The notes below the pieces were generated by a model, which searched no databases, was not told where the DNA came from, and saw nothing but the letters and a program-made list of their open reading frames with translations. From the IMG/VR virus record IMGVR_UViG_3300023174_000040, positions 124,001-188,000 of that record: a DNA stretch of 64,000 nucleotides; one strand, written 5' to 3'. Positions 6 to 48,854 of this stretch are shown piece by piece. The position numbers and the translations under genes were made by a program. How positions within the stretch are numbered: the first letter of the stretch is position 1; each line of letters opens with the position of its first letter.

Positions 6-404
6 TTGGCGAGTCTTAAAAAGAATTATCCCAACACTGGATTCATTACTATCTCTTATGAGGGAAGTGGAGATAGTTTCAATGATTTCTACGACTGCAA
101 TGCCTATGCTAAGTGTAGTTTGAAAAATCCTAAACTTTTGGATAGTTTTAGTGAAAAAGGCCGACCGCAAAGTGAAGACCTTAAAGATATAAGCAAAGAT
201 CTTCATGAGACTAAAAACATTCTGGATAGTTGTATTTGGAGTGTTCTTGAGAGTCATGATGAAGTGAATTTTAACAACGATGGTTGCGAGGGCGAAATTA
301 CATTTGATCTAGATAATGATAAGATCATTGTTTATAATCGTTACCGTGTAACAGAAACAGTGGACTCTCCTGACTACGAATACAAGGCAGGTGATTTTGA
401 ATAA
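6..404 (+). CDS. DUF6878-like hypothetical protein (probably 5'-truncated by window edge)
   Basis: YEGSGDS motif and NNDGCEGEITFD; carries KLLDSF. Confidence 0.5.
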   Translation: MASLKKNYPNTGFITISYEGSGDSFNDFYDCNAYAKCSLKNPKLLDSFSEKGRPQSEDLKDISKDLHETKNILDSCIWSVLESHDEVNFNNDGCEGEITFDLDNDKIIVYNRYRVTETVDSPDYEYKAGDFE

Positions 405-477
405 TATAAATCCGGCTCCAGGCGTCATTAACGCAAATTATCTTAACAACAACAATCACTCAACCAATAATTATAAA

Positions 478-1119
478 ATGAATAATACTAAAGCGGCTCC
501 CAAACTTTCCCCTAGTCAAGAAGCACTTGTAGCCGCCCTTAATGAAGGAAAGCGAAACAAGGATCTTGAAAAGATTATCCTTGAGGATGCTCAGTGCTGT
601 GTTGATTATGCAAGGTATATAATCAAGGGTCGTTGGCCGGAAGCAGAAGATATCATTGTTAATGCCTCCCTTAATACTAAGGTGCTTGGAGAAAAGTCTT
701 GGGGTCGTACCAAGACTTTAGTTTATGTTTATGCGAACTTGATTAAAGATCGCTTCCATAAAGCAGAAGAAAAGATGACTAATGATAAGAGTTGGTATGG
801 GCATAATTACGCCTACACTAAACTTATTCTTAGGCTTAAGGGTGAAATTGTAGATTTCAATAAGCCCGGTATTGTTGTGTGGCTGATGGATGATATTAAT
901 AAGGGTAAAATTGGCAAGCGAATCAAGACTGAAAAGAAGTGGGAAATTCTCGATCAACTCTACAAGAGAATTACCTTGTTCGCTTTTAGCCACCCAGGGG
1001 ATCGTAATATTAAGAAATATGTCAATGAGCAGAAAAAGTTCAAGCAATCTATGATGCTCGAACTTCGTCGGCAAGATAAAGATATGACTGTCGAACAGTT
1101 GATTGAAAAGTTGAAGTAA
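478..1119 (+). CDS. helical-repeat phage protein (YAxxxxxGRWxEAE family)
   Basis: DYARYIIKGRWPEAEDII repeat unit; ATG 478 preferred over upstream low-complexity extension. Confidence 0.6.
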   Translation: MNNTKAAPKLSPSQEALVAALNEGKRNKDLEKIILEDAQCCVDYARYIIKGRWPEAEDIIVNASLNTKVLGEKSWGRTKTLVYVYANLIKDRFHKAEEKMTNDKSWYGHNYAYTKLILRLKGEIVDFNKPGIVVWLMDDINKGKIGKRIKTEKKWEILDQLYKRITLFAFSHPGDRNIKKYVNEQKKFKQSMMLELRRQDKDMTVEQLIEKLK

Positions 1120-1200
1120 TGGAATATCCTGACTTACAACCTTGGTTTGATAATCCCTCTGATGAATATCATGAGTTGGTTTGTGTAGAAGAATTTCCAT

Positions 1201-2052
1201 ATGATGAATAAGCGTGGAACCACCCTTGTTGAACTGCTGGTTAGCGTAACCATCATTGCAGTTTTATCTGGGCTGGTTCTCAGTGCTGTTCAAGCAACAA
1301 GAAAGTCTGCTGGTTACGTTGTTCATCTAAATTGGCTTAGACAGCGTAAATTAGATAATGCTCCCTATAGCAAGACATTAAAAATAGTCTTTATCGGTAA
1401 TAGCCATACATATTTCTCTGATATTCCAGGGGTTATTGTTGAGTTCGCAAAAACAGTAGGAGTGGAAATAAAGACTAAGGTAGTTGTTGTTGGGGGTCAA
1501 TCTTTAGAGGGTCATTGGAGTGGCCCTGATGCTCAAAACGCAATAACAAGTGAATTGAGTAATTTTGTTGTATTGCAAGATATTAGTCAGCGACCATATA
1601 CAGACCCGGATTTATATCAAGAATATGTAAAGAAATTCTGTGATCTGATCGACAATAAATCTGTTCCGATATTATACTTAGTTTGGGCACATAAAACTAA
1701 TTTATGGGTTCAAGGAAGTTTAACTGCTCAAGCTGTTCAAGCTATGAAAGACAATACCTATAGCGAAGTTTGTTTTGTTGGCGAAGCATGGAAAATAGTT
1801 CGTAATGAAAAACCAGATCTTGAATTATTTCTTGATGAAGTTCATGAAAATCCTACCGGGGCTTATTTGACAGCATGTGTTTTTCACAGTATAATTCATA
1901 GATTAGATCCAAGGGGATTGCCTTGCGAAGTTACTACTGAATCGGGGTCTACGGTTAGCGTTAGTCCTGAACTTGCAAATTATTTTCAAACAGTTGCTTG
2001 GCAAGTATCTGAAAAATACAGAAAAAAGTATAAAGCCTACTATCTAAAATGA
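1201..2052 (+). CDS. prepilin-type N-terminal leader fused to SGNH/GDSL hydrolase-like domain
   Basis: KRGTTLVELLVSVTIIAVLSGLVLSAVQATR leader; FIGNSHTY block I; DEVH catalytic DxxH. Confidence 0.75.
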   Translation: MMNKRGTTLVELLVSVTIIAVLSGLVLSAVQATRKSAGYVVHLNWLRQRKLDNAPYSKTLKIVFIGNSHTYFSDIPGVIVEFAKTVGVEIKTKVVVVGGQSLEGHWSGPDAQNAITSELSNFVVLQDISQRPYTDPDLYQEYVKKFCDLIDNKSVPILYLVWAHKTNLWVQGSLTAQAVQAMKDNTYSEVCFVGEAWKIVRNEKPDLELFLDEVHENPTGAYLTACVFHSIIHRLDPRGLPCEVTTESGSTVSVSPELANYFQTVAWQVSEKYRKKYKAYYLK

Positions 2053-2447
2053 AAACCAAGATCACCCTAAAAGATTATCTAATCAGTGTCAATTACTCAA
2101 TTACTGATGGGGCTGAATTTCTTTGGGATTGTTACGGGGAAAATGCTCGCATAATCTCAAATGATAAGAAAAGGGGCAAAAATTTTATTTGCTCTACTGG
2201 TGTGGTTTTTGATGCTGACAAGCAAACTGTTTATGAGATGACTGTTTGGGATTATGAAAAAAATGAGCAATATCGTTGGATAAGTCCGAGATATTCAAAG
2301 AAGCATAGAGAAGAAGAAATAAAAAGAGGCTTTGTGGCAGGACAATCAATTGATAAGTTAAGTTTCATTGAAGTTGAAATAGAAAAAATACTGTCGAAAG
2401 CAAAAGAACTATGCCACACAAAATCAGCAAAAAAGAAAAAATGCTAG
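2049..2447 (+). CDS. hypothetical phage protein
   Basis: ORF overlaps upstream stop; phage-like composition. Confidence 0.6.
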   Translation: MKTKITLKDYLISVNYSITDGAEFLWDCYGENARIISNDKKRGKNFICSTGVVFDADKQTVYEMTVWDYEKNEQYRWISPRYSKKHREEEIKRGFVAGQSIDKLSFIEVEIEKILSKAKELCHTKSAKKKKC

Positions 2448-2860
2448 GTTCTTTTGTCCCTGTAACAGGAGAGTTCTTGGATTTCGTAAAAAATAACACA
2501 CATATTCAATTAAATAATCTAGACCTTGAAAAAGTCTTAAATGCCTATAAGGCTTCTATAGTTAGAGGCATGGATTATGCTATAGTCGAATACTATGATA
2601 AATACAAAAAACCCAATCTCTTGTTCTTCGCTAGGGAGCATTTTAAACAAACGGTTTTGCGTCATTATTATAATTCTCTTAAATTATACAAGCCTCGTTT
2701 TAAGTGCCCTAAAAAATTAAAAAAAGATTCCAATTTTAAGAACCGCACTCACAGACTTTATCGAATCTTTGACTTGAAAAACAACAAAGATATTAGTGGA
2801 ATTCGTATGTTTGAATATTGCAAAAAAACACTTCAAAGAAAGGTCGTTGTTCCAAACTAA
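2441..2860 (+). CDS. hypothetical protein starting MLGSF
   Basis: ATG overlapping the end of the previous gene. Confidence 0.55.
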   Translation: MLGSFVPVTGEFLDFVKNNTHIQLNNLDLEKVLNAYKASIVRGMDYAIVEYYDKYKKPNLLFFAREHFKQTVLRHYYNSLKLYKPRFKCPKKLKKDSNFKNRTHRLYRIFDLKNNKDISGIRMFEYCKKTLQRKVVVPN

Positions 2861-3040
2861 AAATTAGTACCCGTATATACAACAATACCATCTTGTTGGT
2901 AACAAAAAAATAGTGGTCGATCACTATACTGTTACTGGGTTGAGGTTATCGACAGCCAATAGAGTGTAAGTTAAATTTAATATACATTACGCAGTGGTCT
3001 ACACGGAACTGCGATACTAATTTTTTTGGAAAATTTCACT

Positions 3041-3796: not shown

Positions 3797-4053
3797 AATT
3801 CCATAAAGTTTTTATAACAATATTTATAGGAATTCTATTTTATGTCTTCCTTGGAGTAATAATATACAATCAGAGAACAACAATATACAATCAGAAAAAA
3901 AATTACATCAAACATAGAAACATAATTAGTGATTTAGAATACCAGAACAAGAAACTAGAGTATCAGAATGATAAATTAGTAAACCATATAGAAATCTTAA
4001 ATAATAGAATCGTAATCTTATCGGCAAGATCTAGTGAACTACCCACCCCCTAA
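3793..4053 (+). CDS. membrane-anchored coiled-coil protein, C-terminus altered by IS insertion
   Basis: N-terminal TM segment; removing 4034-5338 restores ...LSARSNKEEKSR-stop at 5361. Confidence 0.6.
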   Translation: MKFHKVFITIFIGILFYVFLGVIIYNQRTTIYNQKKNYIKHRNIISDLEYQNKKLEYQNDKLVNHIEILNNRIVILSARSSELPTP

Positions 4054-5338
4054 AGGGAGTGGGCTTCCTGTTTCAACCTCGGTTGCCCTTGATTGCTCTC
4101 AGGTCTTACACCAAGTCCACAGGCTATTCCCGTAGTTCCTACGGTTCTTTTCGCTTCATTAAGTATGTTAATCGCAGCATTGGTGTCACGATCATGCCTA
4201 ATCTTGCACTTCGGACACTCCCAACTACGAACACTCAACGGTAAACTTTCTACTACAAAATTACACTTTGAACAAGTCTTACTTGAAGGAAACCACCTTC
4301 CAACCTTAATGACTGTTCTACCGTGCCAGTTTGCCTTGTATTCAATTTGACGAACGAATTCGCTCATTGATACATCAGCGACACTCTTGCTCAAACACCT
4401 GTTCTTCATCATGCCACTTACATTCAAGTCTTCCAAACAAATCACTTGGTTCTCGTTGATTATTTGGCGACTTACCTTATGTAAGTGGTCATTACGGATG
4501 TTTGCTATCTTCAAGTGCAATTTTGCCAATCGTTTTCTTGATTTCTCCTTGTTTTTACTACCCTTATTTCTTCGGCTGTGTTCTTTGTTCAACATGCGTA
4601 GTCTGACTTCAAGGTTCTTGTAACTGCGGATATTCTTGTATTTCTTGCCGTCACTCAATGTTGCAAGGCTGTTGATTCCAAGATCAACGCCAACCTTGTT
4701 TTTGTTCTTTTTAAGAGGTTTGATTTCTTTTTCAACCAAGATTGAAACAAAGTATTGTCCTGCCTTATTCATAGTCAATGTTGCGTGTCGTATATTTCCG
4801 TTGATCGGACGGTGTAGTTTTACCTTTATGCCTTCATTGAACTTAGGGAAGTGTATTTTGTTTTCCTTCACCTCCACGAACTGAGGCACAGTAAAACTTT
4901 GTTTGTCTCGTCTGCTGTGGAACTTGGGTAATTTTGCTCTTTTGCTAAAGAAATTGTTATATGCTATATCAAGGCACTTTAGTTCAAACTGCAATACTTG
5001 ACTGTTGGTTCCGTACAGCCAATCCTTTTCTTTCTTGAGATTGGTCAGTTCTTTTGCTTGTTTGTAGTAGTTTGGACTTTTCTTGGTTTTGATGTATGAT
5101 GTTTTCCTCTGGTCAAGGAAGTGGTTGTACACAAACCTACAACAACCAAAGTGAATGGCTAGTTTGTTTTGTTGCTCCTTGTTCGGATACAGTCTGTATT
5201 TGTAAGTGTAGTGAACCATAATTATGCAAGGGTTTAAAGCCTGCATAATTATGTATGCACTTGAGTTGAAATTTTTTTCAGAGTTTACCGCCATTCATCC
5301 CAGCCCCTAAAGGGACTGGGTTTTCTGGCGGCGAGGAT
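4034..5338 (-). mobile_element. IS200/IS605-family (IS1341-type, tnpB-only) insertion sequence
   Basis: subterminal hairpins CCCACCCCCTAAAGGGAGTGGG (~4042) and CCCAGCCCCTAAAGGGACTGGG (~5299); right end TTCAC; TTTAT 5' of left end; empty site restores reading frame. Confidence 0.85.
4050..5219 (-). CDS. tnpB: RNA-guided endonuclease TnpB
   Basis: YKYRLYP HTH; GVDLG RuvC-I; EDL RuvC-II; CxxC..CxxC zinc ribbon; DRDTNAAINI RuvC-III. Confidence 0.95.
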   Translation of the reverse strand: MVHYTYKYRLYPNKEQQNKLAIHFGCCRFVYNHFLDQRKTSYIKTKKSPNYYKQAKELTNLKKEKDWLYGTNSQVLQFELKCLDIAYNNFFSKRAKLPKFHSRRDKQSFTVPQFVEVKENKIHFPKFNEGIKVKLHRPINGNIRHATLTMNKAGQYFVSILVEKEIKPLKKNKNKVGVDLGINSLATLSDGKKYKNIRSYKNLEVRLRMLNKEHSRRNKGSKNKEKSRKRLAKLHLKIANIRNDHLHKVSRQIINENQVICLEDLNVSGMMKNRCLSKSVADVSMSEFVRQIEYKANWHGRTVIKVGRWFPSSKTCSKCNFVVESLPLSVRSWECPKCKIRHDRDTNAAINILNEAKRTVGTTGIACGLGVRPESNQGQPRLKQEAHSL

Positions 5339-6155: not shown

Positions 6156-6338
6156 TCATCGAGTCTTTTTGACCCAAGGCTTGTTGTCAACTAACAATTC
6201 TTCTCTAACAATACTACAGTTCTTTGGGGCTTCCACGCCTATCCTTGCTCTATTTCCCTCGACACTTACAAGGGTAATCGTTACGTTTAATTCTGGGATG
6301 TGAATTTTTTCGCTTTCCTTGCGGCACAGCACTAGCAC
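6156..6338 (-). CDS. csrA: carbon storage regulator CsrA/RsmA
   Basis: MLVLxRKxxExI...V+IGVEAPK..IVREEL family signature. Confidence 0.85.
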   Translation of the reverse strand: MLVLCRKESEKIHIPELNVTITLVSVEGNRARIGVEAPKNCSIVREELLVDNKPWVKKTR

Positions 6339-9517: not shown

Positions 9518-9910
9518 ATGAATAAAAAACTTCTTGATATTTTTGTTGATCCAAAAATTCTTCTCAAAGAAGCAATAGAAAAAGATCTAAAAGAGATTGA
9601 AAAATTTCTTAAGAAAAAGATCTATGTGGTTGAATACTGGCATCTAGACGGAAAAGAATTAAAAACTGTTAGGAAAATAAAAGATCAATTAATTCTTCTC
9701 GGTAAGAATCTTGATATAATGGAAAACATAAAGTCTAAAACTTATCGCTATCATTGTTTCCGCATCAAATCATCTATAGATATAGATGATTTAAGAGAAT
9801 TGTTGAGAGTTTTTACAAGAAATACTATAGAAGCACTTATTAATCAAAAAATTCAAGTAGAATGTTCTACTAACGACGCCCAGCAGTGCATAATAGAATG
9901 TCCAGAATAA
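9518..9910 (+). CDS. hypothetical protein
   Basis: ORF from ATG 9518. Confidence 0.55.
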   Translation: MNKKLLDIFVDPKILLKEAIEKDLKEIEKFLKKKIYVVEYWHLDGKELKTVRKIKDQLILLGKNLDIMENIKSKTYRYHCFRIKSSIDIDDLRELLRVFTRNTIEALINQKIQVECSTNDAQQCIIECPE

Positions 9911-10667: not shown

Positions 10668-11180
10668 ATGGGAAATCCCGATTATATCCGGCTTAATCTG
10701 GAGCGGGTTAGTGATCTTGGCGATATGCTAATCACTAAATCGAAAGAATTCTATGATACCGCAATATCAAATCTTAAAATAGAATTAAGATTTGATACCG
10801 TTAGCAATTATCATGGATCTCCTTTGAATGAAGAAACTAATTGGGGCGGTTATAAGAAACATATACCAACGGGATATAACGGCTGGATCGGTAGTATTAG
10901 TTGTCTTGTAAATTCTAATCAAAATCCATATTGCCGTATAGGGCATCTCACCGACGCAGACCAGCATCTTTTTGGCTATAAAGGATTCAGGGGATTCCAT
11001 ACAGGTAGTGGTTGTCCCGGTCATAAATTCGGAAAATGTCCAATGAATATTGGATTCTATTTCTTTATGGATGACTTTCCACTTTTGAAATCAAGATATG
11101 ATAAGTGGAAGATATTGAGTAGTTTTGAGAAGAATAAGAGTTGGGAAAATTCAAACCTTAATTACGAACAAGGATTGTGA
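10668..11180 (+). CDS. hypothetical protein, candidate leaderless gene
   Basis: ATG 9 nt after GGTACGG; ILSSF near C-terminus. Confidence 0.65.
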   Translation: MGNPDYIRLNLERVSDLGDMLITKSKEFYDTAISNLKIELRFDTVSNYHGSPLNEETNWGGYKKHIPTGYNGWIGSISCLVNSNQNPYCRIGHLTDADQHLFGYKGFRGFHTGSGCPGHKFGKCPMNIGFYFFMDDFPLLKSRYDKWKILSSFEKNKSWENSNLNYEQGL

Positions 11181-12817: not shown

Positions 12818-13030
12818 ATGCTTATCCCCTCTGAAATCACAAACTTGTTAGTCGAGGACGTTCTCAAGCCTTTCGTTTTATTGAGAGATAGGCTCAAAGA
12901 AATCCAAAGAGAAATCCAAAGAATTGAAACAAACCTTGACACAAATCTTGGCAAGGTTGTTGATTTAATCAGAGATAGCGAAAAAAAACGAACCAAAATG
13001 CTGGATAGTTTCAGGAAAGAAAATGGCTAA
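12818..13030 (+). CDS. small coiled-coil protein ending KMLDSFRKENG
   Basis: ORF; heptad pattern. Confidence 0.55.
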   Translation: MLIPSEITNLLVEDVLKPFVLLRDRLKEIQREIQRIETNLDTNLGKVVDLIRDSEKKRTKMLDSFRKENG

Positions 13031-13999: not shown

Positions 14000-14578
14000 A
14001 TGAGAAATTTCACATATAATATAGAATTCAATCCAAAGTTTGCATACTTGTATGCTCTCAATGTTTTGAAAGGATCATACTCCGGGGAAGATGAAGGGCT
14101 AGTCTTTTCATCAGTTTCCCCAAAGTATGCCTGTCTGTATGCTGTGAAGATCAAAAAAGACCGACTTTGCGATAGACTGCATAGTGAAATACTTTTGAGG
14201 ATGATTGAGAACACCTACAATAGTATTGACAAAAGATTTGTTAAAGCTTATATTGATTTTGTAACAAAAAATGAGTCAAAAGAACTTGAGTCTATCCTTT
14301 GCTATTCACCAGGTTATTCAAGTTCTTGGTCGGAAGAAAATATAGAAGAAATTAAATGCTTCGTAACAGATGATTACTGTTGCGATATTGAAATTGATCA
14401 TAACAATGAGCCAGAGTGGAACGACTGTACGGCTGTAAATGGTACTGGTGCGAGGGTATCGGTCAGCGAAAGTCTTTCTGACATATTGTTTGGTGAATAT
14501 TACGATGAAATCGAGGAAAATTGCCATCAATATGACTACGAAGATGTTTATGATGCTCCAACAGACGATGAAGCATAA
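14000..14578 (+). CDS. helical-repeat family protein with acidic tail
   Basis: PKFAYLYALNVLKG / PKYACLYAVKIKK repeats. Confidence 0.55.
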   Translation: MRNFTYNIEFNPKFAYLYALNVLKGSYSGEDEGLVFSSVSPKYACLYAVKIKKDRLCDRLHSEILLRMIENTYNSIDKRFVKAYIDFVTKNESKELESILCYSPGYSSSWSEENIEEIKCFVTDDYCCDIEIDHNNEPEWNDCTAVNGTGARVSVSESLSDILFGEYYDEIEENCHQYDYEDVYDAPTDDEA

Positions 14579-14996
14579 AGAATTATTATCTTCGTTCTTA
14601 GAAGTACCCGATTCATTCCATGATTGGATTGGAGATAAAAATTATTTCGTTAAATATAATGAAGAAGAAGCGAAGAAAATATACCAAAAAAATTATAACC
14701 CCAATAATTTTGGAATTATTTTCAAAAGCTTTAATATAACTGACGTTTCAATTTCAATGTATCCTATAGAAACTCCAATGTATCCTGGCAACTCAATATT
14801 TCGTAGTGCAATACCTCAATTTGATATTAGTGGAAATGGTTCTGGTTTCTCTGAATTATTTTTTGGATCAAAAAACGAATGTAAAAATATAATTTTAAGT
14901 TTATTGGGAAATCGAAGTTGTGTTGTGAATTTTTCTCCCATCTACAGTTTTAAGGATGGAATCTGCCTTAAAGATTACTCTATTGCTCTAAAATAA
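14568..14996 (+). CDS. hypothetical protein starting MKHKELLSSF
   Basis: ATG overlapping the end of the previous gene. Confidence 0.55.
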   Translation: MKHKELLSSFLEVPDSFHDWIGDKNYFVKYNEEEAKKIYQKNYNPNNFGIIFKSFNITDVSISMYPIETPMYPGNSIFRSAIPQFDISGNGSGFSELFFGSKNECKNIILSLLGNRSCVVNFSPIYSFKDGICLKDYSIALK

Positions 14997-15015
14997 ATGA
15001 ATAAAAAGATGAAGC

Positions 15016-15345
15016 ATGAGTATTCGTGAAGTTATTATCGAAACTGATAATGGTGAATTGTTCGGAGAAAATATTCTCGCAAGTTTTGTTTGCGATGTTG
15101 ATTGCGAGTATATTCCTTACGAACCAGAAACAGAATATTCTCCAAAAGAAGGTGGATATACAGATATTTATGGATATACTTTTAAAATGACACTCTATAG
15201 TGCCGATGGAAAAAATGATCTCCTCGGTAGTTTTATAAAGTATGAAAATCTTAGTGAAGAAAAGAAAAAAGAAATCAATAACTGGGTTGGTTGGTGGATT
15301 GAAGAGCATTTCAAAAAAGAAGAAGATTATAATTGGGATGAATAA
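15016..15345 (+). CDS. acidic hypothetical protein
   Basis: contains ILASF and LLGSF. Confidence 0.55.
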   Translation: MSIREVIIETDNGELFGENILASFVCDVDCEYIPYEPETEYSPKEGGYTDIYGYTFKMTLYSADGKNDLLGSFIKYENLSEEKKKEINNWVGWWIEEHFKKEEDYNWDE

Positions 15346-15438: not shown

Positions 15439-16497
15439 ATGAGCGACGGATTGAATCTCCATAAGAATCTTATCAACGGCCGAATCACTGATGTTGTTCG
15501 TCGTAATCGCAACATCAATCTTCCTATGATGATTTTTGGCCCTCCCGGCATTGGTAAGAGCGAACAGGTTCATCAGAGTCGTGATGGCGATGATGATATG
15601 ATGATTGATCTTCGCCTTAATATCCTCGACAGTATTGATCTTCGTGGACTCCCTATCATTCAGAAGAATGAAAAGGGGACTGCAACCCATGTTGAATGGG
15701 TTAGGCCAGAGTTCATCCCGTGGCAGGGTCGAGGAATTATCTTCCTTGATGAAATTAATACTGCTCCCCCATCAACTCAAAATGCAGCGTTGCAGTTGGT
15801 TCTTGACCGCAAGGTTGGGCCTCACCATCTTGGCAAGGACTGGTATATTGTTGCTGCTGGTAATCGGGCAGAAGATAAGTGCCATGTTCATCCTCTTAGT
15901 GGAGCCCTTCTTGACCGATTTGCGGTCTATGATTACACTCCAGATTATGATACCTGGGTTGATTGGGCAATCAAGAGCAATGTTCATGAGGATGTTATCG
16001 GCTTCATTAGTTGGAGGAAGGATTTGCTTCTCCAAGATCGAAGTGATGAATATAGTGTGAGTACGAATCCTCGTAGTTGGGGGTATGTCAGCAAGCATTT
16101 GTTTGCCGGTAGCAAGAATCTTGCCGATATTCGTGCCTGTGTCGGAAGTCCTGCTACTGAACTTCTGAGTTATCTTGATATTTGCAAGAATCTTCCCAAC
16201 ATGGAAGATCTTATTGCCGGAAAGAGTAAGTGGAAGGAAGATAACAAGAGGATCAGCGTCAGTTATGCTGTTGCTAATAATCTTGCAAGCACCTTGCTTT
16301 CTAGCAAGACTCCTGCTAAGATTCTTGATAACTGCATGAAGGTCGTAATTGATATTAGTCCTGAGCCGGGTGCGTTGTTTATTCGTCGTGTTCTGACCAA
16401 TGATAAGATTCGTGATCTTTGCTACAAGAGCGATATGGTGAGTAAGTGGCTTGAAAAGAATCAGGAACTTATTTCCAGTAGCATGATGCTCGCATAA
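15439..16497 (+). CDS. MoxR-like AAA+ ATPase
   Basis: Walker A GPPGIGKS; Walker B IIFLDEIN; AAGNR; LLDRF. Confidence 0.9.
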   Translation: MSDGLNLHKNLINGRITDVVRRNRNINLPMMIFGPPGIGKSEQVHQSRDGDDDMMIDLRLNILDSIDLRGLPIIQKNEKGTATHVEWVRPEFIPWQGRGIIFLDEINTAPPSTQNAALQLVLDRKVGPHHLGKDWYIVAAGNRAEDKCHVHPLSGALLDRFAVYDYTPDYDTWVDWAIKSNVHEDVIGFISWRKDLLLQDRSDEYSVSTNPRSWGYVSKHLFAGSKNLADIRACVGSPATELLSYLDICKNLPNMEDLIAGKSKWKEDNKRISVSYAVANNLASTLLSSKTPAKILDNCMKVVIDISPEPGALFIRRVLTNDKIRDLCYKSDMVSKWLEKNQELISSSMMLA

Positions 16498-16573: not shown

Positions 16574-17917
16574 ATGTCACAAGCACTTGCAAAAAAGAGT
16601 AAGGTTAAGAAGGAAGTAGCCGATCTATTCTCCACAGTCACCAAAGAAGAACAGGATAGTTTCCGAAAGAAACTTGATGTTATTATCTTTGGATTCGCTC
16701 ATCATTTTCCATTCTTTGGAAGTGTTAGTGAAAGGTGTCGATATAGTTTGACCAAGGATGATAATTTTATCCCTACCGCTGGTATTGATAAAAACGGCCA
16801 TATCATCTTTAATCTCAATTTCGTCAATTCTCTTGACAATAAGCAATTCTTGTTTCTTGTTGCACATGAGATTGGTCACTTTATTTTTGAACATAGTTCA
16901 AGAATTATGAATCGAAATCATATTCTGTGGAATAAGGCCGCAGACTATGCGATTAATCTTTTCTTGTATTATCAGTTTGGAAGCAAAGAGTATTTTCCAA
17001 TCATTGATAAGATTTGCTTTGATAAGAATTGGGATGTTAATTCATCTGAGAACAAGTATGACAAGATGAATGTTGAGCAAATCTACAATATCATTGAAAA
17101 GGAAGCCGATAAACTTCCAAAAATCAAGATTGATATTTTTATTGAATCATTCGATGAAAATGAAGGCGAAGATAATCAGGAAGGCGATGGTAGCGGAGAT
17201 GGCAAAAAGTATGTAGATATTCGTGAGCGACGAGTTCCTCTGCCCAAGAAGAATGGCAAGAATAAGGAACAAATTAGTCGTGAAATGAAGGACTATGTAC
17301 GTCGAGCAGTTTCGGATGCCTTCAATATCAGTAAGAGTCAGGGTTTGCTTCCTGCTGGTATGGAGCGTATGATTGTCAGTCATCTTCGTCCCAAGATTGA
17401 TTGGCTTAGTAAGTTACGTGAGAAACTCAGGTTTGGAACTGACCGTCTTGCTAAGGCTGATACTAATTGGAGTATGCCCAACAAGCGATTCCTTGATCGT
17501 GATTTCGTGTTCCCGAGTTATCACGGGCCTAATCAGCCTAAGATTGCATACGCCATTGATACAAGTGGCAGCATGAGTGAAGAAGATCTCAAAAATGCAG
17601 TTTCGGAACTTGATGGTATCCGAAAGCAATTGAATGCTAATATTTACTTTATGGACTGCGATGCAGATGTTTACACTGGTCGTTGGATTAATAGCAATCA
17701 ACCCCTGCCTTGTTTGCAGGGTGGTGGCGGGACTGATTTCGTTCCGGTGTTCAAGCATCTTGTTGACAAAAAGATTCGCCCAGATTATTGTGTATTTTTC
17801 ACAGATGGTTATGGGGAATTTGGAGAAGATCCTAAAAAGTTCAATACATTGTGGGTATTGACCAGTGATGTTAAGCCTCCGTTTGGTGATGTTATTCGAT
17901 ACAATGACTTACAGTAA
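16574..17917 (+). CDS. DUF2201-type metallopeptidase plus VWA-domain protein
   Basis: HEIGH (HExxH); WNxAADYAIN; MIDAS DTSGS; GGGGTDF; FTDG. Confidence 0.85.
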   Translation: MSQALAKKSKVKKEVADLFSTVTKEEQDSFRKKLDVIIFGFAHHFPFFGSVSERCRYSLTKDDNFIPTAGIDKNGHIIFNLNFVNSLDNKQFLFLVAHEIGHFIFEHSSRIMNRNHILWNKAADYAINLFLYYQFGSKEYFPIIDKICFDKNWDVNSSENKYDKMNVEQIYNIIEKEADKLPKIKIDIFIESFDENEGEDNQEGDGSGDGKKYVDIRERRVPLPKKNGKNKEQISREMKDYVRRAVSDAFNISKSQGLLPAGMERMIVSHLRPKIDWLSKLREKLRFGTDRLAKADTNWSMPNKRFLDRDFVFPSYHGPNQPKIAYAIDTSGSMSEEDLKNAVSELDGIRKQLNANIYFMDCDADVYTGRWINSNQPLPCLQGGGGTDFVPVFKHLVDKKIRPDYCVFFTDGYGEFGEDPKKFNTLWVLTSDVKPPFGDVIRYNDLQ

Positions 17918-24262: not shown

Positions 24263-24847
24263 ATGAAACTTAAATTTGATCTTGATTTGACGGATAATAA
24301 GCACCTTCGCAATCATTTGGTAAGGAATGTTCTTTGGTATTTTAAAGATAATATCGACAGAACCAAAGAACTTGATGATTATTTCTGCACCAGTCCAGCA
24401 CTTGCCTATAAGTATCTAAAAGTGTTTCTTGAAAAAGGGGATAAAGCCTCTCCTGAGATTGAGAAGGTTCTGAGCAAAAACATTCATTATCTTTTTTCTT
24501 ATTTTCAGCACACCGAAAATCATAAAGTTCAAGACGAAAAGTTGCAGAAAAGACTTGATAAGAAGATCTACAATGATCCCCGCCTCTCATACTGTTATGC
24601 TTATAGTGTTCTAAAGTCTAGAATACCAGAAGAACATGAAGGTGTTTTCCTCAAAAACTACGACTTTGCATATCGCTATGCTTGCGAAGTAATCGGGGAC
24701 AAATTCCCAGATAGTATTCACAAAATGCTACTTCTTTCGAGTTTTGAAGAAAATGACAAGGAAAAATATGGTCTTAAAAAGTATATTGAATGTTGCGAGA
24801 AAAAAGAATTTAAATATGTTGGAAGAAATTGGTATGATAAGTTTTAA
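24263..24847 (+). CDS. helical-repeat phage protein
   Basis: YCYAYSVLKSR, YRYACEVIG; HKMLLLSSF. Confidence 0.65.
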   Translation: MKLKFDLDLTDNKHLRNHLVRNVLWYFKDNIDRTKELDDYFCTSPALAYKYLKVFLEKGDKASPEIEKVLSKNIHYLFSYFQHTENHKVQDEKLQKRLDKKIYNDPRLSYCYAYSVLKSRIPEEHEGVFLKNYDFAYRYACEVIGDKFPDSIHKMLLLSSFEENDKEKYGLKKYIECCEKKEFKYVGRNWYDKF

Positions 24848-27676: not shown

Positions 27677-27967
27677 ATGGATTCTAATAATTTCATGAGG
27701 ATTTTTGACGATAGGAATGAGCATAAACTTAGCATTGTTGCCTGTGGAAATGGGTATGATCTTTGCTGCCCAAACGGCAAGGTGGTTTACTGCGGGGTTG
27801 ATCCAGAACTCGTTGAAGTTCTTGAAGATTATCTTATTGTTAAAGAATTCAATCTTATTGTTAAAGAATTCAATCTTATTGATAAAGAATTCAATCTTAA
27901 AGAATTCAATCTTATTGATAAAGAATTCAATCTTATTGATAAAGAATTCAATCTTATTGACGTATGA
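27677..27967 (+). CDS. hypothetical protein with LI(V/D)KEFN tandem tail
   Basis: GGAGAGG RBS; repeat is in frame. Confidence 0.55.
   Translation: MDSNNFMRIFDDRNEHKLSIVACGNGYDLCCPNGKVVYCGVDPELVEVLEDYLIVKEFNLIVKEFNLIDKEFNLKEFNLIDKEFNLIDKEFNLIDV
27831..27960. repeat. 21-bp tandem repeat (ATCTTATTGWTAAAGAATTCA) x~6, one unit shortened to 15 bp
   Basis: read directly; no spacers. Confidence 0.9.
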
Positions 27968-28719
27968 CCATGAATAATATCTTCGATAAGTATAGTGCAT
28001 ATGAATTGCGACAAATATACGCAAGTCCCATTAGTGATTGGCCCGAACCATTTAAGAACTGGATTCACAAAGAAATAGCAGAATCACTTTTGGATTCTTG
28101 GCTTAAGAATGTTGATGACAATGAATATCGTGATCGTGTTCACGAAATTGTAGAGAATATGACATACGGTTATCCAGACAAAAATGGCAACAAAATGCTA
28201 GATTTGCCAATATACTTGGCGGCTGGCACACCAGTAAAAGCCAACATAAATGGAGAGTGGCTAGTTGGTAAAAAATTAGAAACTCCCAAAAAATTTGAAA
28301 TGCTGGGTAGTTTTTCAGATAATAAAACTATCCTAGTTGAAATAGATGGAAAAGAACTAGCAGTAAACAAAGATTTGGTGAAAGTTTTTGAACCTTTGAT
28401 GGTTGATGACAATGGAAATAAACCTAAACTAGAAGAATTTAAAAAAGATTTTAAGATTCTTGCGATTAATCTAAGTGACCCAATCAACAAAATTAATATC
28501 GACTATAATAAAGCCGAAATTGGCAATGAATTCATCAGAATATATCCAATAATCCAAGAACACGAATACAGATATGCTTTTCGAGAATATCCTTGTTGGG
28601 CTGTTGAGCAAGTTATTTTGGGAAAAAGAATAATAATTGCAACACCAATTGATACCATGATAGCAGTAAATTTATTTATAGACCGGCTTAAGTTTATCAA
28701 GTCTCGTTGGTTATTTTAA
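27964..28719 (+). CDS. hypothetical protein
   Basis: 251-aa ORF; contains EMLGSF. Confidence 0.6.
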   Translation: MTMNNIFDKYSAYELRQIYASPISDWPEPFKNWIHKEIAESLLDSWLKNVDDNEYRDRVHEIVENMTYGYPDKNGNKMLDLPIYLAAGTPVKANINGEWLVGKKLETPKKFEMLGSFSDNKTILVEIDGKELAVNKDLVKVFEPLMVDDNGNKPKLEEFKKDFKILAINLSDPINKINIDYNKAEIGNEFIRIYPIIQEHEYRYAFREYPCWAVEQVILGKRIIIATPIDTMIAVNLFIDRLKFIKSRWLF

Positions 28720-30263: not shown

Positions 30264-30740
30264 ATGTCTAAATCCAAACTTCTCAATAGTTTTCTTCCAT
30301 TAGAAATTCAGTTAGAAGATGCTGCTAAAAAAGATCTAAAGTATATTCTCCAAAAGAAAAAAGATAGTGAAAAACTATCAAATGATTTTTATAAGATATA
30401 CAATAAATTCGTTAAGGCCAACCCAGATATAACCGATATTATCGAAGTAAACAATGTTGACGCTACAGGACAATTTCCCGGTATTGCAAGAGATTTGATT
30501 TCTGTAGCGAAAGAAATAGTTGTTGATAATGATGGATTCGTATTTGATTTTAGTTGGGATGAATCAGACTTTGACTTACATGACCGTAATCACATGTCAA
30601 ATCTATTGGTGTGTTTTTCAAATACATTTAAAATATTTGAAAAACTTCACCAAAAGAATCAGTTCTTTACAGTTCAAGTAGAAGATAGAAATGTGACTGT
30701 AGATTGGGGATTTGAACAAGGATTCATGTATTATGACTAG
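30264..30740 (+). CDS. hypothetical protein starting MSKSKLLNSF
   Basis: ATG overlapping the end of the previous gene. Confidence 0.6.
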   Translation: MSKSKLLNSFLPLEIQLEDAAKKDLKYILQKKKDSEKLSNDFYKIYNKFVKANPDITDIIEVNNVDATGQFPGIARDLISVAKEIVVDNDGFVFDFSWDESDFDLHDRNHMSNLLVCFSNTFKIFEKLHQKNQFFTVQVEDRNVTVDWGFEQGFMYYD

Positions 30741-44355: not shown

Positions 44356-44646
44356 ATGGAAACTAGTAAAAACAGTATGCTTGCCAGTTTCGACCAGAAA
44401 CTCGCTGAATACAAGACTCTCCTAGAGAGTCACGACTGGTATTACAGTTGGAGCGACGATAATAGGGTCTGGAGTAGTGGTGAACAGAACCTCAAGCGTC
44501 TGAAAGAAATTGCAGAGTTTGGTGGTTTGGCTTACCAGATCCTGTTTAACGAGGAATACCAGAAGCATTTTAATGAGGGGTGTTTTAAGACTAGTTTTTC
44601 ACACACTGGTAATCCCTCTTGTGGATCTCCTCCTTTTAAAGTCTAG
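44356..44646 (+). CDS. hypothetical phage protein, candidate leaderless
   Basis: ATG 9 nt after motif; HDWYY.WSDD; MLASF. Confidence 0.65.
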   Translation: METSKNSMLASFDQKLAEYKTLLESHDWYYSWSDDNRVWSSGEQNLKRLKEIAEFGGLAYQILFNEEYQKHFNEGCFKTSFSHTGNPSCGSPPFKV

Positions 44647-44673
44647 AGTTTCCCTCTGGTACGGTTTTTGACT

Positions 44674-44889
44674 ATGCAAAACATTAGTATCTCCTGCCGA
44701 CTCTGCGGTGCAAAAAAAGATATTAGTGTTGATCCCTCCACATATGTGAAGTGGAGTACGGGACAAGGTTTGGTTCAAGACTTGTTTTCCAATCTTAGTG
44801 CAGATGATCGGGAATTGATGATTAGTCAGACTTGTGGAACCTGTTTCGACAACTTGTTTCCACCAGAGAATGATTATGATGAAGATTAA
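44674..44889 (+). CDS. small Zn-binding phage protein, candidate leaderless
   Basis: CxxC...LSADDRELMIS.TC..C; ATG 9 nt after motif. Confidence 0.65.
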   Translation: MQNISISCRLCGAKKDISVDPSTYVKWSTGQGLVQDLFSNLSADDRELMISQTCGTCFDNLFPPENDYDED

Positions 44890-45361
44890 TCCTCATCCTG
44901 ACTGGATTGAAACTGGCCTAAAAACCCGTCCAGATTGTTATCATTATATACGCAAAGTGAGTCTAGTCACCTCTACTGAAGGCAAGGGTTATTGGAGCAG
45001 AGTGGCTAAAGATGTGAAGATAATCAAACTAGATTTGAATACCTACGAAGGACACGATGATCGGTTTGAATTAAGGGCGTATTTTTCCAAGAAAACTTGG
45101 AATGTTGAAAAGCATGGCTTAATTTATACTGACAAACTTTGGCTCACTACCTTTAAGAAAAGTCTAGTTGATTCTGGTTTCAGTAAAAAGGGACTCAATG
45201 CAGTAGACTATAGTGAACAGGGTATGCAGGGCGATGATTATGTGAGTATGGATGTATCGTCGCCCGGTGTTCACGATCAAGTTGATAGTTTCATTAAAGA
45301 TTACGAAAAAGTTCTTTATAGTGTCAAAGACAGGTTTTTAGGTAGTTTAAGAAAGAAGTAA
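44876..45361 (+). CDS. hypothetical phage protein
   Basis: GLIYTD..YSEQGMQG.DYVS. Confidence 0.65.
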   Translation: MMKINPHPDWIETGLKTRPDCYHYIRKVSLVTSTEGKGYWSRVAKDVKIIKLDLNTYEGHDDRFELRAYFSKKTWNVEKHGLIYTDKLWLTTFKKSLVDSGFSKKGLNAVDYSEQGMQGDDYVSMDVSSPGVHDQVDSFIKDYEKVLYSVKDRFLGSLRKK

Positions 45362-46305: not shown

Positions 46306-46406
46306 CTTCTTAGCGGTTGAGTGAAGAATTAAATCTTCCCCTCCCCTTTATATGGGGGAGGGGAGGGTGACGAAAAGTCTGTTTCTGGTACGGTAGTGTT
46401 TAGCCT

Positions 46407-46479
46407 GCGGCTTTAGCTCAATTGGCAGAGCAAGGGGCTTTTAACCTCTAGGTTCCGGGTTCGATTCCCGGAGGCCGCA
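46407..46479 (+). tRNA. tRNA-Lys(TTT)
   Basis: acceptor GCGGCTT/AGGCCGC; AGGGG-CT-TTT-AA-CCTCT; TTCGATT T-loop; no encoded CCA. Confidence 0.95.
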
Positions 46480-46502
46480 CTCTTTCTGTACGGTGAGTGA
46501 GC

Positions 46503-46856
46503 ATGGAAACAATCCAAAAAGAAAAACTCCTCACCAGTTTTGTTGAAGTTAAGAAAATTTATCTTCATGCTCGTCGATGGTTTCAACGCTCTTATGGTAA
46601 TACCTACCATACCGTTGAAATTTGGGTAAATGACCGATTGGTTCATAAGATTCCTTTCACGATTCTAGATCGTAAATCTGCTGGGTATGACCATCAATGG
46701 TCATGCGATGCCTGTAAGTGGCTGGTTGATAATGGTTATGGACGTTTTAATGGAGTCTATCCAATCAGCAGTTTATTTCTTTTTATATATTGCCGAGAAA
46801 TTGGAATAGAGTATAATCATACTGTTGAAGATGTTAAAAGAAAGAGGGATCTTTAA
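46503..46856 (+). CDS. hypothetical protein, candidate leaderless
   Basis: ATG 9 nt after TGTACGG; KLLTSF. Confidence 0.65.
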   Translation: METIQKEKLLTSFVEVKKIYLHARRWFQRSYGNTYHTVEIWVNDRLVHKIPFTILDRKSAGYDHQWSCDACKWLVDNGYGRFNGVYPISSLFLFIYCREIGIEYNHTVEDVKRKRDL

Positions 46857-47095
46857 TGAGTGATCAACATTCTAATTGGTGGCACAAATTTATTAGTGGT
46901 ATGCCTCCACTTAACAAGATTAGCAAGGACTTTGAAACTTCGTCTCAAACATTTAGTGAAAAAGTCGCAGATTTACGATCTAGAATCAAAAAGTTCAAAG
47001 AACAAGTTGAATCAGAGACTAAGGCTTTTTATAAGAAGAAGAAAAAAATTCTTCGTCGTGACCCTGCCCGCCCCTGGTGAAAAGGAAATTTAATT

Positions 47096-47449
47096 ATGAC
47101 TACCTTGACTAAAATTATAATGCCAAACGTGGAAGTTCTTCGTAAGACTGGTTATAAGGTTCGTGTTTATCACGGGCGAACTTATCTCCGTTGTGAAACT
47201 AATGAAAGGCTTAATACTCCAGAGATCGTTTGTGAGTATATGAGCAAGCGTGAATATGAACACTTCAATAATGAAGTTCGCCGGGTGAACTGGGAACTCA
47301 GTTGCAAGGGCGGCTTTACTATTGTGGAGATTACTACTCCTGATGGTCGTGATCTGAGGGGTAAGTTTAATGTTCCAGCAGGCGGAATGTTTAATCGTAA
47401 ACTGGGCGTGAAGATTGCTACTAATCGGGCTCTTAAGAGTGGGGCATAA
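47096..47449 (+). CDS. hypothetical protein
   Basis: AAGGA RBS. Confidence 0.6.
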   Translation: MTTLTKIIMPNVEVLRKTGYKVRVYHGRTYLRCETNERLNTPEIVCEYMSKREYEHFNNEVRRVNWELSCKGGFTIVEITTPDGRDLRGKFNVPAGGMFNRKLGVKIATNRALKSGA

Positions 47450-47810
47450 AATGAAGATTTTTGTAGTATTTGATTTTCCGGAAATTAAAGATGCTAATAG
47501 CGAGGAAGCCACTTTTGAGATTGATAGTCTGAGTGAGGATGTCAATGGTCTTGGTTATAATTGGTATATTGATGAAGTTATAGGAGAAGAGGATAAAGGT
47601 TGACCAATATCCTCTATTAGATTATAATAGAGGTATTATGGAAAAATATAATTGGATTGTTTGGAAGAACAACCGAATAGCAGGGTATGTATCTGCTTAT
47701 AGCGAATGGGACGCAATTAGATTTGCCAGAATGAAGTTTGGTTGTGAAACCTGGGTAGAAAGAACGGTAGAATCTGGTACGGTGTGAGGGCGTCACACGG
47801 AGAACTCTAG

Positions 47811-48041
47811 ATGCTAGACGATATTGACTTTAGTGATTTCATTCTTGGTGGTGAAACTGAAACCGCTCAGAAGAAGAATAAGAGAATCCCCCTTGAAGTT
47901 TTCCTCAAGAGTATTGTAGAAGCCGTCAAGAATGGCGGAAACAGTATTAGTGTTGCAAATGAATTGGGGATCTCTCCTCAAGCAGTAAGGCAGCGTTGTC
48001 ATAAACTCCGGGCTAAGGGAGCCCCTGTGCCACAATGGTGA
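47811..48041 (+). CDS. HTH protein, paralog 3 of 6
   Basis: GGNSISVANELGISPQAVRQRCHKLRAKG. Confidence 0.75.
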   Translation: MLDDIDFSDFILGGETETAQKKNKRIPLEVFLKSIVEAVKNGGNSISVANELGISPQAVRQRCHKLRAKGAPVPQW

Positions 48042-48326
48042 ATCTTATGGATAAGGAACAGGCCACACTATTTTGTAAGATCGCAGGTAAACTTTCTTAT
48101 TCAAAGAGTTTAACTCAAGATAATGTTCTCAAGAATAGTTTAGATGATATTCTCGAGATGATTAGTTTGTATTGTGATACCGCCCCTGATAATCTACTTC
48201 GTAATAATATCGACGTTGTTATGGAGCATAAGAATTGGCAGATACAAAAGGGTTTGGTACAATAAAAACCCCCAAGAGGTTTAAGTCTTGGGGGTTTACA
48301 CCAAAAGTTTTCAGATTTGGTACGGT

Positions 48327-48413
48327 GGAATCTTGGCCGAGCGGATTATGGCAGCGGTTTACTAAACCGCCGAAGGTTAAAATCTTCCGGGGGTTCGAAT
48401 CCCTCAGATTCCG
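48327..48413 (+). tRNA. tRNA-Ser(ACT), class II
   Basis: acceptor GGAATCT/AGATTCC; G73; GCGGT-TT-ACT-AA-ACCGC; long variable arm; TTCGAAT. Confidence 0.9.
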
Positions 48414-48466
48414 TTTTATGGAATAATAATATGGATTGGAACGGTTTTCGGTACGGAATAAAAAAG

Positions 48467-48854
48467 ATGCGTAAGATTGAACAAGAGATGATTGATAGCA
48501 TCTTGAACAAGAAGAATCATTCTTGTGGCAACACTAGGGTTGAAGTTGCCGATGATGTGATTCTTGTCTTTTTGTTTAATAACCTGATTGCTAAAATTAC
48601 CAACAAGACTGTAGGGATTAATAATCAGGGATACACTACATATGTTACCAAGAGCCGGCTTAATTGTATCCTTCGTAAATTTTGTGAAGGTAGAAATATT
48701 TACCAGAAAGATTTCAACTGAAGGTAGAAATATTTACCAGAAAGATTTCAACTGGTATATTAGTGGCGAGCCCATATTAAACAATAGTTCAGAATACCCC
48801 AGTAATGTTTGGAATTACTTTCCAAATGTGGTACTATTGAAAAGTTTTGAATGA
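48467..48854 (+). pseudogene. phage gene frameshifted by 34-bp tandem duplication
   Basis: TGAAGGTAGAAATATTTACCAGAAAGATTTCAAC x2 (48685-48752); removing one copy joins MRKIEQ... to ...LLKSFE. Confidence 0.7.

What the first reader, a model, noticed from the sequence alone, without database searches (positions are those of the whole stretch)
135..48848. Short linear motif [ILM]-L-x-S-F shared by about 12 unrelated proteins
Seen: KLLDSF (135), MLGSF (2441), KILSSF (11112), KMLDSF (12998), ELLSSF (14583), NILASF and DLLGSF (15073, 15220), LLLSSF (24731), EMLGSF (28300), KLLNSF (30279), SMLASF (44377), KLLTSF (46527) and VLLKSF (48834). Near-variants are KLLDIF (9518 ORF), SLLDSW (27964 ORF) and RFLGSL (44876 ORF). 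The host proteins share nothing else, and the motif is usually close to the N- or C-terminus. Leu and Ser codons vary (CTT/CTC/CTG/TTG/TTA; AGT/TCT/TCG), so selection looks protein-level. A rough composition estimate gives about 1 chance hit in ~19,000 residues versus 13 seen. Inference: a docking tag that recruits many early proteins to a common hub (sliding clamp, RNAP, the MoxR/VWA chaperone, or a compartment-import factor), analogous to clamp-binding peptides such as QL[SD]LF or PIP boxes.
Basis: partly seen in the sequence, partly recalled or inferred. Interest (0 to 1): 0.85.

Follow-up and report, generated by a model that had tools for sequence, protein, structure and literature searches.

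The report
Shared terminal LLxSF peptide tag
About a dozen unrelated small proteins of an uncultured freshwater jumbo phage carry the same five-residue peptide ([I/L/M]-L-x-S-F), mostly as a clade-specific add-on at one end of the protein, which suggests a shared recognition tag whose partner is still unknown.

Summary
All 13 [ILM]L.SF sites are at the stated coordinates, in + strand ORFs that are supported as genes. I expect 0.74 by composition. It is the top pattern in a broad motif space (log10 p -11.8; best of 244 shuffled proteomes -8.2). Eight unrelated phage loci show no enrichment (2 vs 1.63).

Nine of 13 sites lie within 20 residues of a terminus. Lys precedes the motif in 11 of 13. 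Orthologs at 39-90% identity keep 10 of 13 sites, with synonymous codon changes. In all four families that have distant homologs, the motif lies outside the shared domain, in a clade-specific extension, insertion or tail. Relatives carry further N-terminal copies on non-orthologous proteins.

Caveats:
- The internal sites look structural or fortuitous. One aligns to a non-motif sequence in paralogs and two are not conserved.
- The 36 kb flanking the window in the same genome holds only 2 strict hits (0.73 expected) plus one variant.
- No partner is identified.
- The motif fails the clamp-binding and PIP-box definitions.

Verdict: a real, protein-level, lineage-specific terminal tag. It is most likely a shared recognition peptide, but the hub is inferred, not shown.

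The parts
2441..2455 (+). N-terminal tag MLGSF, residues 11-15 of the 149-aa protein 2411-2860
   Evidence: ISKKEK[ML]LGSF is invariant in 7 homologs at 50-90% identity. AF2 places a short helix at 7-13, then SF in coil, with pLDDT 74-85.
14583..14597 (+). N-terminal tag LLSSF of protein 14553/14568-14996
   Evidence: ELLSSFLEVPxSFxDWI is kept in a 39%-identical ortholog, L006:4468, which starts MKNELLSSF.
30279..30293 (+). N-terminal tag LLNSF, residues 6-10 counting from the Met at 30264
   Evidence: The 54%-identical ortholog P0042 has DVLDSFLPLE. The L.SF core is kept and position 1 changes to Val.
44377..44391 (+). N-terminal tag MLASF, residues 8-12 of protein 44356-44646
   Evidence: Kept in the 73%-identical ortholog. 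The distant homolog in Methylophilales phage Melnitz has a gap exactly at MLASF.
46527..46541 (+). N-terminal tag LLTSF, residues 9-13 of protein 46503-46856 (phrog_6246 family)
   Evidence: The 12-aa extension M[ED]TIxKEKLLxSF[VI]EV is present in 10 clade members and absent from 18 distant homologs, which start MKKI.... AF2 gives pLDDT below 50 for residues 1-10, and the folded domain starts at residue 18.
9530..9544 (+). N-terminal variant LLDIF (MNKKLLDIFVDP) of protein 9518-9910
   Evidence: MNKKLLD[IN]FVDPK is conserved in orthologs at 64-75% identity. The Ser position is Ile or Asn here.
11112..11126 (+). C-terminal tail motif ILSSF, residues 149-153 of the 170-aa protein 10668-11180
   Evidence: KWKIL[SG]SFE is kept in L006 and L007 orthologs, with L006 at 61% identity, and with codon changes. 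The alignment to the Pseudomonas phage homolog ends at residue 145, just before the motif.
12998..13012 (+). C-terminal motif MLDSF, residues 61-65 of the 70-aa protein 12818-13030
   Evidence: Kept in the 77%-identical L010 ortholog, with synonymous changes.
48834..48848 (+). C-terminal motif LLKSF-E-stop at the end of the frameshifted Kyano_Gp96 gene (48431-48721 plus 48642-48854)
   Evidence: Intact orthologs in L021, L025 and L026 end in NVVLLKSFE. The Pfam domain covers only residues 1-90 of 117. Cyanophage homologs end differently.
135..149 (+). Internal motif LLDSF, about residue 54 of a 142-aa DUF6878-like protein
   Evidence: SLKNPKLLDSFSE is conserved in the L010 ortholog. It lies inside the weak DUF6878 match. 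No distant homolog was available for the add-on test.
15073..15087 (+). Internal ILASF in protein 15016-15345; probably not a functional tag
   Evidence: Changed to LEVSF in the 58%-identical ortholog.
15220..15234 (+). Internal LLGSF in protein 15016-15345
   Evidence: Ser changes to Ala in the ortholog (DLLGAF), inside a well-conserved block.
24731..24745 (+). Internal LLSSF, residues 157-161 of 194, in protein 24263-24847
   Evidence: Aligns to ILLRMI or MLFRMI in paralogs 14000-14578 and L006:3887, so it sits in a folded helical segment. It is kept only in the near-identical L002.
28300..28314 (+). Internal MLGSF, residues 113-117 of 251, in protein 27964-28719
   Evidence: No homologs were found, so conservation is untested.
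45335..45349 (+). C-terminal variant FLGSL of protein 44876-45361
   Evidence: [RL]FLGSL is conserved at the C-terminus of orthologs at 52-56% identity.
49877..49891 (+). C-terminal variant TLNSF-QK-stop of protein 49604-49900
   Evidence: Orthologs have ALNTF and MLDTF at the same place.

Best explanation
The core [I/L/M]-L-x-S-F is a lineage-specific peptide tag. It is usually preceded by Lys within three residues and followed by a hydrophobic residue or Glu. In this jumbo-phage clade it was grafted onto the N- or C-terminus of at least 8-10 unrelated small accessory proteins.

I propose that it forms a short amphipathic turn or helix that presents Leu, Leu and Phe to a hydrophobic groove of one common partner. 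The tagged proteins would thereby be recruited, sorted or handed over to the same place. The same domains work without the tag in other phages, so the partner is most likely specific to this clade. It could be phage-encoded or a feature of its host.

Shown: enrichment, terminal position, protein-level purifying selection, add-on status and recurrence on non-homologous proteins.
Inferred: binding, a single partner, and any downstream effect. That effect could be hub docking, sorting into a capsid or compartment, or delivery to a protease.

The four or five internal sites are probably structural or fortuitous and not part of the system.
For: - Enrichment: 13 seen against 0.74 expected, the top pattern of the whole motif space, beyond all 244 shuffles. 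Unrelated phages show none.
- Position: 6 sites in the first 20 residues (0.15 expected) and 3 in the last 20 (0.13 expected).
- Flanks not used to define the motif are also biased: Lys at -3..-1 in 11 of 13 (p 1e-5) and Glu at +1..+3 in 7 of 13 (p 0.01).
- Orthologs at 39-90% identity keep the four fixed positions at 10 of 13 sites, while the x position and the codons vary.
- Add-on status holds in 4 of 4 testable families: phrog_6246, the DWYY family, Kyano_Gp96 and the 10668 family.
- A 30%-identical paralog outside the window (L015:2151) keeps KEAALNSFVEVKKI as its best-conserved segment.
- New N-terminal copies occur on non-orthologous proteins in relatives: L006:3887 MMLKSF, L007:15309 METKQKELLNSF and L026:1120 MKNKNEMLSSFE.
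- The AF2 model of the phrog_6246 member leaves the tag outside the folded domain, with low pLDDT.
Against: - No partner was found and none could be tested.
- The 36 kb flanking the window (10.5k aa) gave only 2 strict hits against 0.73 expected, one of them a TnpB N-terminus.
- The N-terminal copies sit in longer conserved blocks. In the 2411 family the tag is predicted with moderate confidence (pLDDT 74-85), so it may pack on the domain.
- The internal sites behave like ordinary structure.
- Homolog sets are small (2-28 sequences) and gene starts are partly my own calls.
Confidence: 0.5

Rival explanations
1. Capsid-targeting or propeptide signal. This is a specific version of the tag idea and rivals the reader's hub reading. 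[quoted passage not shown]
For: Five or six tags lie at residues 5-15 of otherwise unrelated proteins, and three more do so in relatives. Glu follows within three residues in 7 of 13 sites, as in SFVE, SFLE and SFE. The T4 CTS precedent and its likely counterparts in giant phages are described in PMC5694885.
Against: Three strict and at least two variant copies are C-terminal, where a cleavable N-terminal propeptide model does not apply. No virion proteome, protease or capsid genes are available for this phage. The genes lie among small accessory ORFs, not in a head module.
Confidence: 0.15
2. No common partner. The motif would be a favoured structural element, a terminal helix end that packs onto each protein's own fold. 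Alternatively it is the remnant of short 5' or 3' gene modules spread by recombination or cryptic paralogy within this hyperplastic region.
For: N-terminal copies share a longer pattern, L.SF[LVI].[VLI]. 46503 and L015:2151 are true paralogs that share the tag. The 24263 site lies in a helical domain shared with paralogs. The 2411-family tag is modelled with fair confidence. Enrichment is local to the window.
Against: BLASTP shows no relation among the carriers. Tags occur at either terminus, on domains whose distant homologs lack them. Leu codons and flanking DNA differ between carriers. Unrelated phage proteomes show no such preference.
Confidence: 0.27
3. Chance, amplified by post hoc pattern picking.
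For: LL.SF alone (7 seen, 0.32 expected, p 6e-8) is only near the tail of the shuffled-proteome minima. Replication in the flanks was weak.
Against: The full pattern is 3.5 log units beyond the best of 244 shuffles in a motif space that includes the degeneracy. The flank, position and ortholog evidence is independent of how the pattern was chosen.
Confidence: 0.05
4. A nucleic-acid signal, such as a translation-initiation region or a regulatory site, that happens to read as LLxSF.
For: AGT TTT encodes Ser-Phe in 9 of 13 sites, and AGT in 11 of 13. Two N-terminal carriers start exactly 15 nt after the GTACGGT signal and both begin ATGGAAAC.
Against: Six different Leu codons are used, and orthologs show synonymous changes within the motif. 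The sites are frame-locked. They also occur at C-termini and in genes that overlap the upstream gene. AGT is already the usual Ser codon before Phe, at 56%.
Confidence: 0.03

Closest known systems
T4 capsid targeting sequence (CTS) of internal proteins IPI-III and Alt
   Same: A short N-terminal peptide shared by otherwise unrelated phage proteins and acting as an address label. Glu is often close behind it here, reminiscent of the protease site (PMC5694885).
   Different: The sequence is different. Here the tag also occurs at C-termini. There is no evidence of cleavage, of virion association or of a head-gene context.
Bacterial beta-clamp-binding motif QL[SD]LF / QLxLxL, and the PIP box
   Same: A five- or six-residue hydrophobic peptide ending in Phe, found at either terminus of many unrelated proteins and docking into one groove of a hub (my background knowledge).
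   Different: No Gln occurs at or before position 1 in any of the 13 sites. Ser replaces the essential Leu at position 4. There is no aromatic pair.
Encapsulin cargo-loading peptides (terminal ...L-x-x-G-S-L... tags)
   Same: A terminal tag, C- or N-terminal, that binds the interior of an HK97-fold shell. Some copies here read MLGSF, LLGSF or FLGSL. The comparison itself rests on my background knowledge.
   Different: The x position is not Gly in most copies. Phe is preferred to Leu. No encapsulin-like shell gene was seen among the proteins searched.
Short linear motifs in general (ELM-type docking motifs)
   Same: It is short, terminal or in low-confidence regions, arises independently on unrelated proteins, and keeps its fixed positions while the wildcard varies.
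   Different: Several copies are embedded in longer conserved blocks, and no binding domain is known.

Membership tests
Beta-clamp-binding motif (QL[SD]LF / QLxLxL) | Gln at position 1 | tested here: not met
   0 of 13 sites have Gln at -2, -1 or position 1. Lys dominates instead.
Beta-clamp-binding motif (QL[SD]LF / QLxLxL) | Leu or another hydrophobic residue at position 4, before the terminal Phe or Leu | tested here: not met
   The residue before Phe is Ser in all 13 sites, and Ile, Asn, Thr or Ala in variants.
Beta-clamp-binding motif (QL[SD]LF / QLxLxL) | Binds the DnaN hydrophobic pocket | not testable with these tools
   No complex prediction or binding assay is available.
PIP box Qxx[LIM]xx[FY][FY] | Gln plus a C-terminal aromatic pair | tested here: not met
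   No Gln. The residue after Phe is V, L, I, S, E, D or R.
T4-type capsid targeting sequence | A 10-20-residue N-terminal peptide shared by unrelated proteins | tested here: inconclusive
   Met for 5-6 window proteins and 3 in relatives, but 3 strict and 2 variant copies are C-terminal and 4 are internal.
T4-type capsid targeting sequence | A prohead-protease cleavage site directly after the tag | tested here: inconclusive
   Glu lies within +1..+3 in 7 of 13 sites (p 0.01), but this phage's protease and its specificity are unknown.
T4-type capsid targeting sequence | Carriers are prohead or virion proteins | not testable with these tools
   The phage is uncultured and there is no proteome.
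Encapsulin cargo-loading peptide | A terminal G-S-L-type core plus an adjacent encapsulin shell gene | tested here: inconclusive
   Only 3 of 13 sites have Gly at x. No shell-like Pfam or PHROG hit appeared among the 10 largest window proteins searched. The rest of the 323-kb genome was not examined.
Short linear docking motif (general definition) | Lies in terminal or disordered regions, outside the conserved domain | tested here: met
   9 of 13 sites are within 20 residues of an end. The motif lies outside the shared domain in 4 of 4 families with distant homologs. pLDDT is below 50 in one of two models.
Short linear docking motif (general definition) | Independent occurrence on non-homologous proteins, with conservation in orthologs | tested here: met
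Short linear docking motif (general definition) | A defined binding partner or domain | not testable with these tools

The most novel reading that the evidence does not exclude
This clade of about 250-330-kb freshwater phages uses a previously undescribed terminal address label, K-[LM]-L-x-S-F. The label sorts many accessory proteins to one phage-built destination, such as the capsid interior, a compartment or import gate, or a dedicated chaperone or protease like the adjacent MoxR/VWA-metallopeptidase pair. That would be a new phage protein-sorting signal, with its receptor still to be found.
Probability: 0.3. Interest if true: 0.85.

Novelty: new variant of a known kind. Interest (0 to 1): 0.6.

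Why it matters
Jumbo phages encode hundreds of small proteins of unknown function, and almost nothing is known about how they are organised in the cell. A shared terminal tag would group a dozen of these ORFans into one pathway. It would also give a simple handle (peptide pull-down, tag swap onto a reporter) for finding the partner, and a search pattern for related phages. If the partner were a capsid, a compartment or a protease, the tag would be a new sorting or timing signal, with possible use for targeting cargo.

Tried and rejected
- Pfam and PHROGs on the carriers gave almost nothing: a weak DUF6878 match, phrog_16661, phrog_6246 and Kyano_Gp96.
- Megablast of 6 kb against known phages found no match. 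The nearest MoxR homologs are below 60% identity.
- The search for related loci with the 2411-family alignment returned only the same genome and its close relative.
- tblastn of the 6-404 and 27964 proteins against phages found no match.
- The exhaustive representative search for the 30264 protein found one ortholog only.
- Foldseek of both AF2 models against the PDB gave nothing below E = 0.01.
- Literature search for 'LLxSF' gave nothing relevant, and 'GTACGGT' returned only primer-type hits.
- DNA-level explanation: rejected on codon variation.
- Paralogy among the carriers: not detected by BLASTP.
- The second most enriched pattern, KEFN, is just a tandem repeat inside one protein.
- Complex prediction of the tag with candidate hubs was not possible with the tools.


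Full report
**Source and context.** The window is part of a 323-kb IMG/VR contig (UViG_3300023174_000040; window position 1 is about contig position 124,001). A 251-kb near-identical relative exists, along with more distant metagenomic relatives. No sequenced phage is close. The region has 36.6% GC and is packed with small + strand ORFs. Recognisable genes:
- a MoxR AAA ATPase (15439-16497)
- a DUF2201 metallopeptidase/VWA protein (16574-17917)
- a TnpB transposase (4050-5294, - strand)
- methyl- and glycosyltransferases
- four tRNAs

**The observation.** All 13 [ILM]L.SF sites exist at the stated coordinates, in frame, in + strand ORFs. I called 150 genes with a codon-usage model and then corrected three models that it had mishandled. 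Orthologs and external gene calls later confirmed these.
- Composition and 5000 within-protein shuffles give 0.73-0.75 expected hits, with a maximum of 5, against 13 observed.
- To allow for post hoc choice, I searched every 4-of-5 pattern with one of 35 residue classes at any one position. [ILM]L.SF is the best pattern in the whole proteome (log10 p -11.8). In 244 shuffled proteomes the best value was -8.2 and the median -6.1.
- Eight loci of unrelated phages (36,046 aa) gave 2 hits against 1.63 expected. The composition estimate therefore holds for real proteins, and the motif is not generally favoured.
- BLASTP shows no relationship among the carriers.
- The runner-up pattern, KEFN, is a tandem repeat in one protein.

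**Evidence independent of how the pattern was chosen.**
- Position: 6 sites start in the first 20 residues (0.15 expected), 3 lie in the last 20 (0.13 expected) and 4 are interior (0.50 expected).
- Flanks: Lys occurs at -3..-1 in 11 of 13 sites (p 1e-5) and at -1 in 6 of 13. Glu occurs at +1..+3 in 7 of 13 (p 0.01). Gln never precedes the motif.
- Codons: six Leu codons are used. Ser is AGT in 11 of 13 sites, but AGT is already 56% of Ser codons before Phe.

**Orthologs.** Relatives at 39-90% protein identity keep the four fixed positions at 10 of 13 sites. The x position varies (T/G/S, S/G, N/D) and codons change synonymously (CTC/CTT/CTG, TTG/CTA, AGT/AGC, TTT/TTC, and ATG to CTG for Met to Leu). 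Exceptions:
- 30279 has Leu changed to Val at position 1.
- 15073 is lost (ILASF becomes LEVSF), and 15220 has Ser changed to Ala.
- 24731 aligns to ILLRMI or MLFRMI in paralogs.

**The add-on test.** It could be done for four families that have distant homologs, and all four agree.
- phrog_6246 family (46503): ten clade members carry a 12-residue N-terminal extension, M[ED]TIxKEKLLxSF[VI]EV. Eighteen distant homologs start directly at MKKI....
- 44356 family: the homolog in Methylophilales phage Melnitz has a gap exactly at MLASF.
- Kyano_Gp96 family: the gene is frameshifted in the window (48431-48721 plus 48642-48854) and intact in L021, L025 and L026. The Pfam domain ends at residue 90 of 117, and cyanophage homologs end differently from the clade's ...NVVLLKSFE.
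- 10668 family: the alignment to a Pseudomonas phage homolog stops four residues before KWKILSSFE.

**Recurrence.**
- A 30%-identical paralog of 46503 lies outside the window (L015:2151). It has lost the family's RRWFQRSYGNTYH hallmark but keeps KEAALNSFVEVKKI.
- Relatives carry N-terminal copies on proteins that lack the motif, or have no homolog, in the window: L006:3887 MMLKSF, L007:15309 METKQKELLNSF, L026:1120 MKNKNEMLSSFE, and a second site in P0042.
- Variant copies are conserved at termini: MNKKLLD[IN]F (9518), [RL]FLGSL (44876) and [TAM]L[ND][ST]F (49604).

**Structure.** AF2 on the phrog_6246 alignment (pLDDT 81) leaves residues 1-10 below pLDDT 50. It predicts a short helix at 6-11, and the folded domain starts at residue 18. 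AF2 on the 2411 family (7 sequences, pLDDT 72.5) predicts a helix at 7-13 followed by Ser-Phe in coil, at pLDDT 74-85. That tag may therefore be partly ordered. Neither model matches a solved fold.

**Limits.**
- I extended the genome 18 kb on each side (10,542 aa). There were 2 strict hits against 0.73 expected, one a TnpB N-terminus and one internal, plus the ALNSF variant. At the window's rate about 7.5 would be expected. The enrichment is therefore local, or tied to a class of genes, and some winner's curse is likely.
- The N-terminal copies share a longer pattern (L.SF-hydrophobic-x-hydrophobic) and sit in conserved blocks of 12-20 residues. Part of the signal may therefore be a structural element.
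- No partner could be sought.

**Interpretation.** The data fit a clade-specific terminal recognition tag best (confidence about 0.5). The step from 'selected terminal peptide on unrelated proteins' to 'binds one common partner' is inference.
- Because the tag works at either end, generic docking is favoured over a strictly cleavable T4-like capsid targeting sequence. The N-terminal subset still resembles the CTS in logic (PMC5694885).
- It is not a clamp-binding motif or a PIP box by their defining residues.
- The rivals are a structural element or shuffled module with no common partner (0.27), chance (0.05) and a nucleic-acid signal (0.03).

**Side finding.** The heptamer GTACGGT occurs 50 times on the + strand and never on the - strand (2.2 expected). 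It is mostly intergenic, lies 15-110 nt upstream of starts, and has an extended upstream consensus. It is conserved and strand-specific in relatives and near background in three unrelated phage loci checked (L028, L029, L034: 0-1 copies each). It is probably the clade's promoter or 5'-end signal.

Noticed in passing
window-wide, e.g. 6426, 8509, 10653, 44341, 46488; 37 of 50 copies lie in 44-60 kb: GTACGGT occurs 50 times on the + strand and 0 times on the - strand (2.2 expected; maximum 5 in shuffles). It is mostly intergenic and lies 15-110 nt upstream of + strand starts. The extended consensus is GTTTCC(Y)T(Y)(Y)G-GTACGGT in 6-30 kb and ATTTTG/ATCTG-GTACGGT in 44-60 kb. Six genes start exactly 15 nt after it. 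It is strand-specific and abundant in relatives (L007 7/0, L010 7/0, L021 13/0, L026 25/0). Three unrelated phage loci checked (L028, L029, L034) have 0-1 copies each. It is likely a clade-specific promoter or transcript 5'-end signal.
   Followed up: partly
window 48431-48854: The Kyano_Gp96-family gene is split by a frameshift into 48431-48721 and 48642-48854. It is intact (117-152 aa ORFs) in L021, L025 and L026. This may be a pseudogene or an assembly error.
   Followed up: yes
window 46503-46856: The window's copy of the phrog_6246 protein has two short odd stretches (FTILDRKSAGYDHQWSCDAC and SSLFLFIY) where all relatives read FTYGYGDQWSYNAG and SR. It looks like a compensated frameshift pair or sequence errors.
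   Followed up: no
window 48326-48414: ARAGORN calls an 89-nt tRNA-Ser with anticodon ACT, which is unusual (A at position 34). AGT is the commonest Ser codon here at 35%.
   Followed up: no
window 14577-15007: This 431-bp stretch, most of ORF 14553-14996 (an N-terminal tag carrier), is absent from the 251-kb close relative (L002) but present in the more distant L006.
   Followed up: partly
window 22647, 45446, 47811, 50011, 54882, 58464: This is a paralog family of small proteins of 76-110 aa. Three copies are 82-83% identical and end in ...RTSNTxERAxxILASLGV.
   Followed up: no
window 4050-5294 (-), and L015:7037-8203 (-) just upstream of the window: Two TnpB/IS605 OrfB (Cas12f-like TNB) genes lie in this phage region. 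The upstream one begins MLKSF by coincidence with the motif.
   Followed up: no
window 27677-27967: This protein ends in about six tandem copies of (D)KEFNLI. That accounts for the second most enriched peptide pattern in the window.
   Followed up: yes
window 6156-6338 (-), 60496-60882 (-), 1201-2052 (+): External gene calls list three domain hits: a CsrA-domain ORF (the window coordinates are inferred from the L015 offset), a SET-domain protein, and a protein with a type IV pilin-like N-terminal methylation motif.
   Followed up: no
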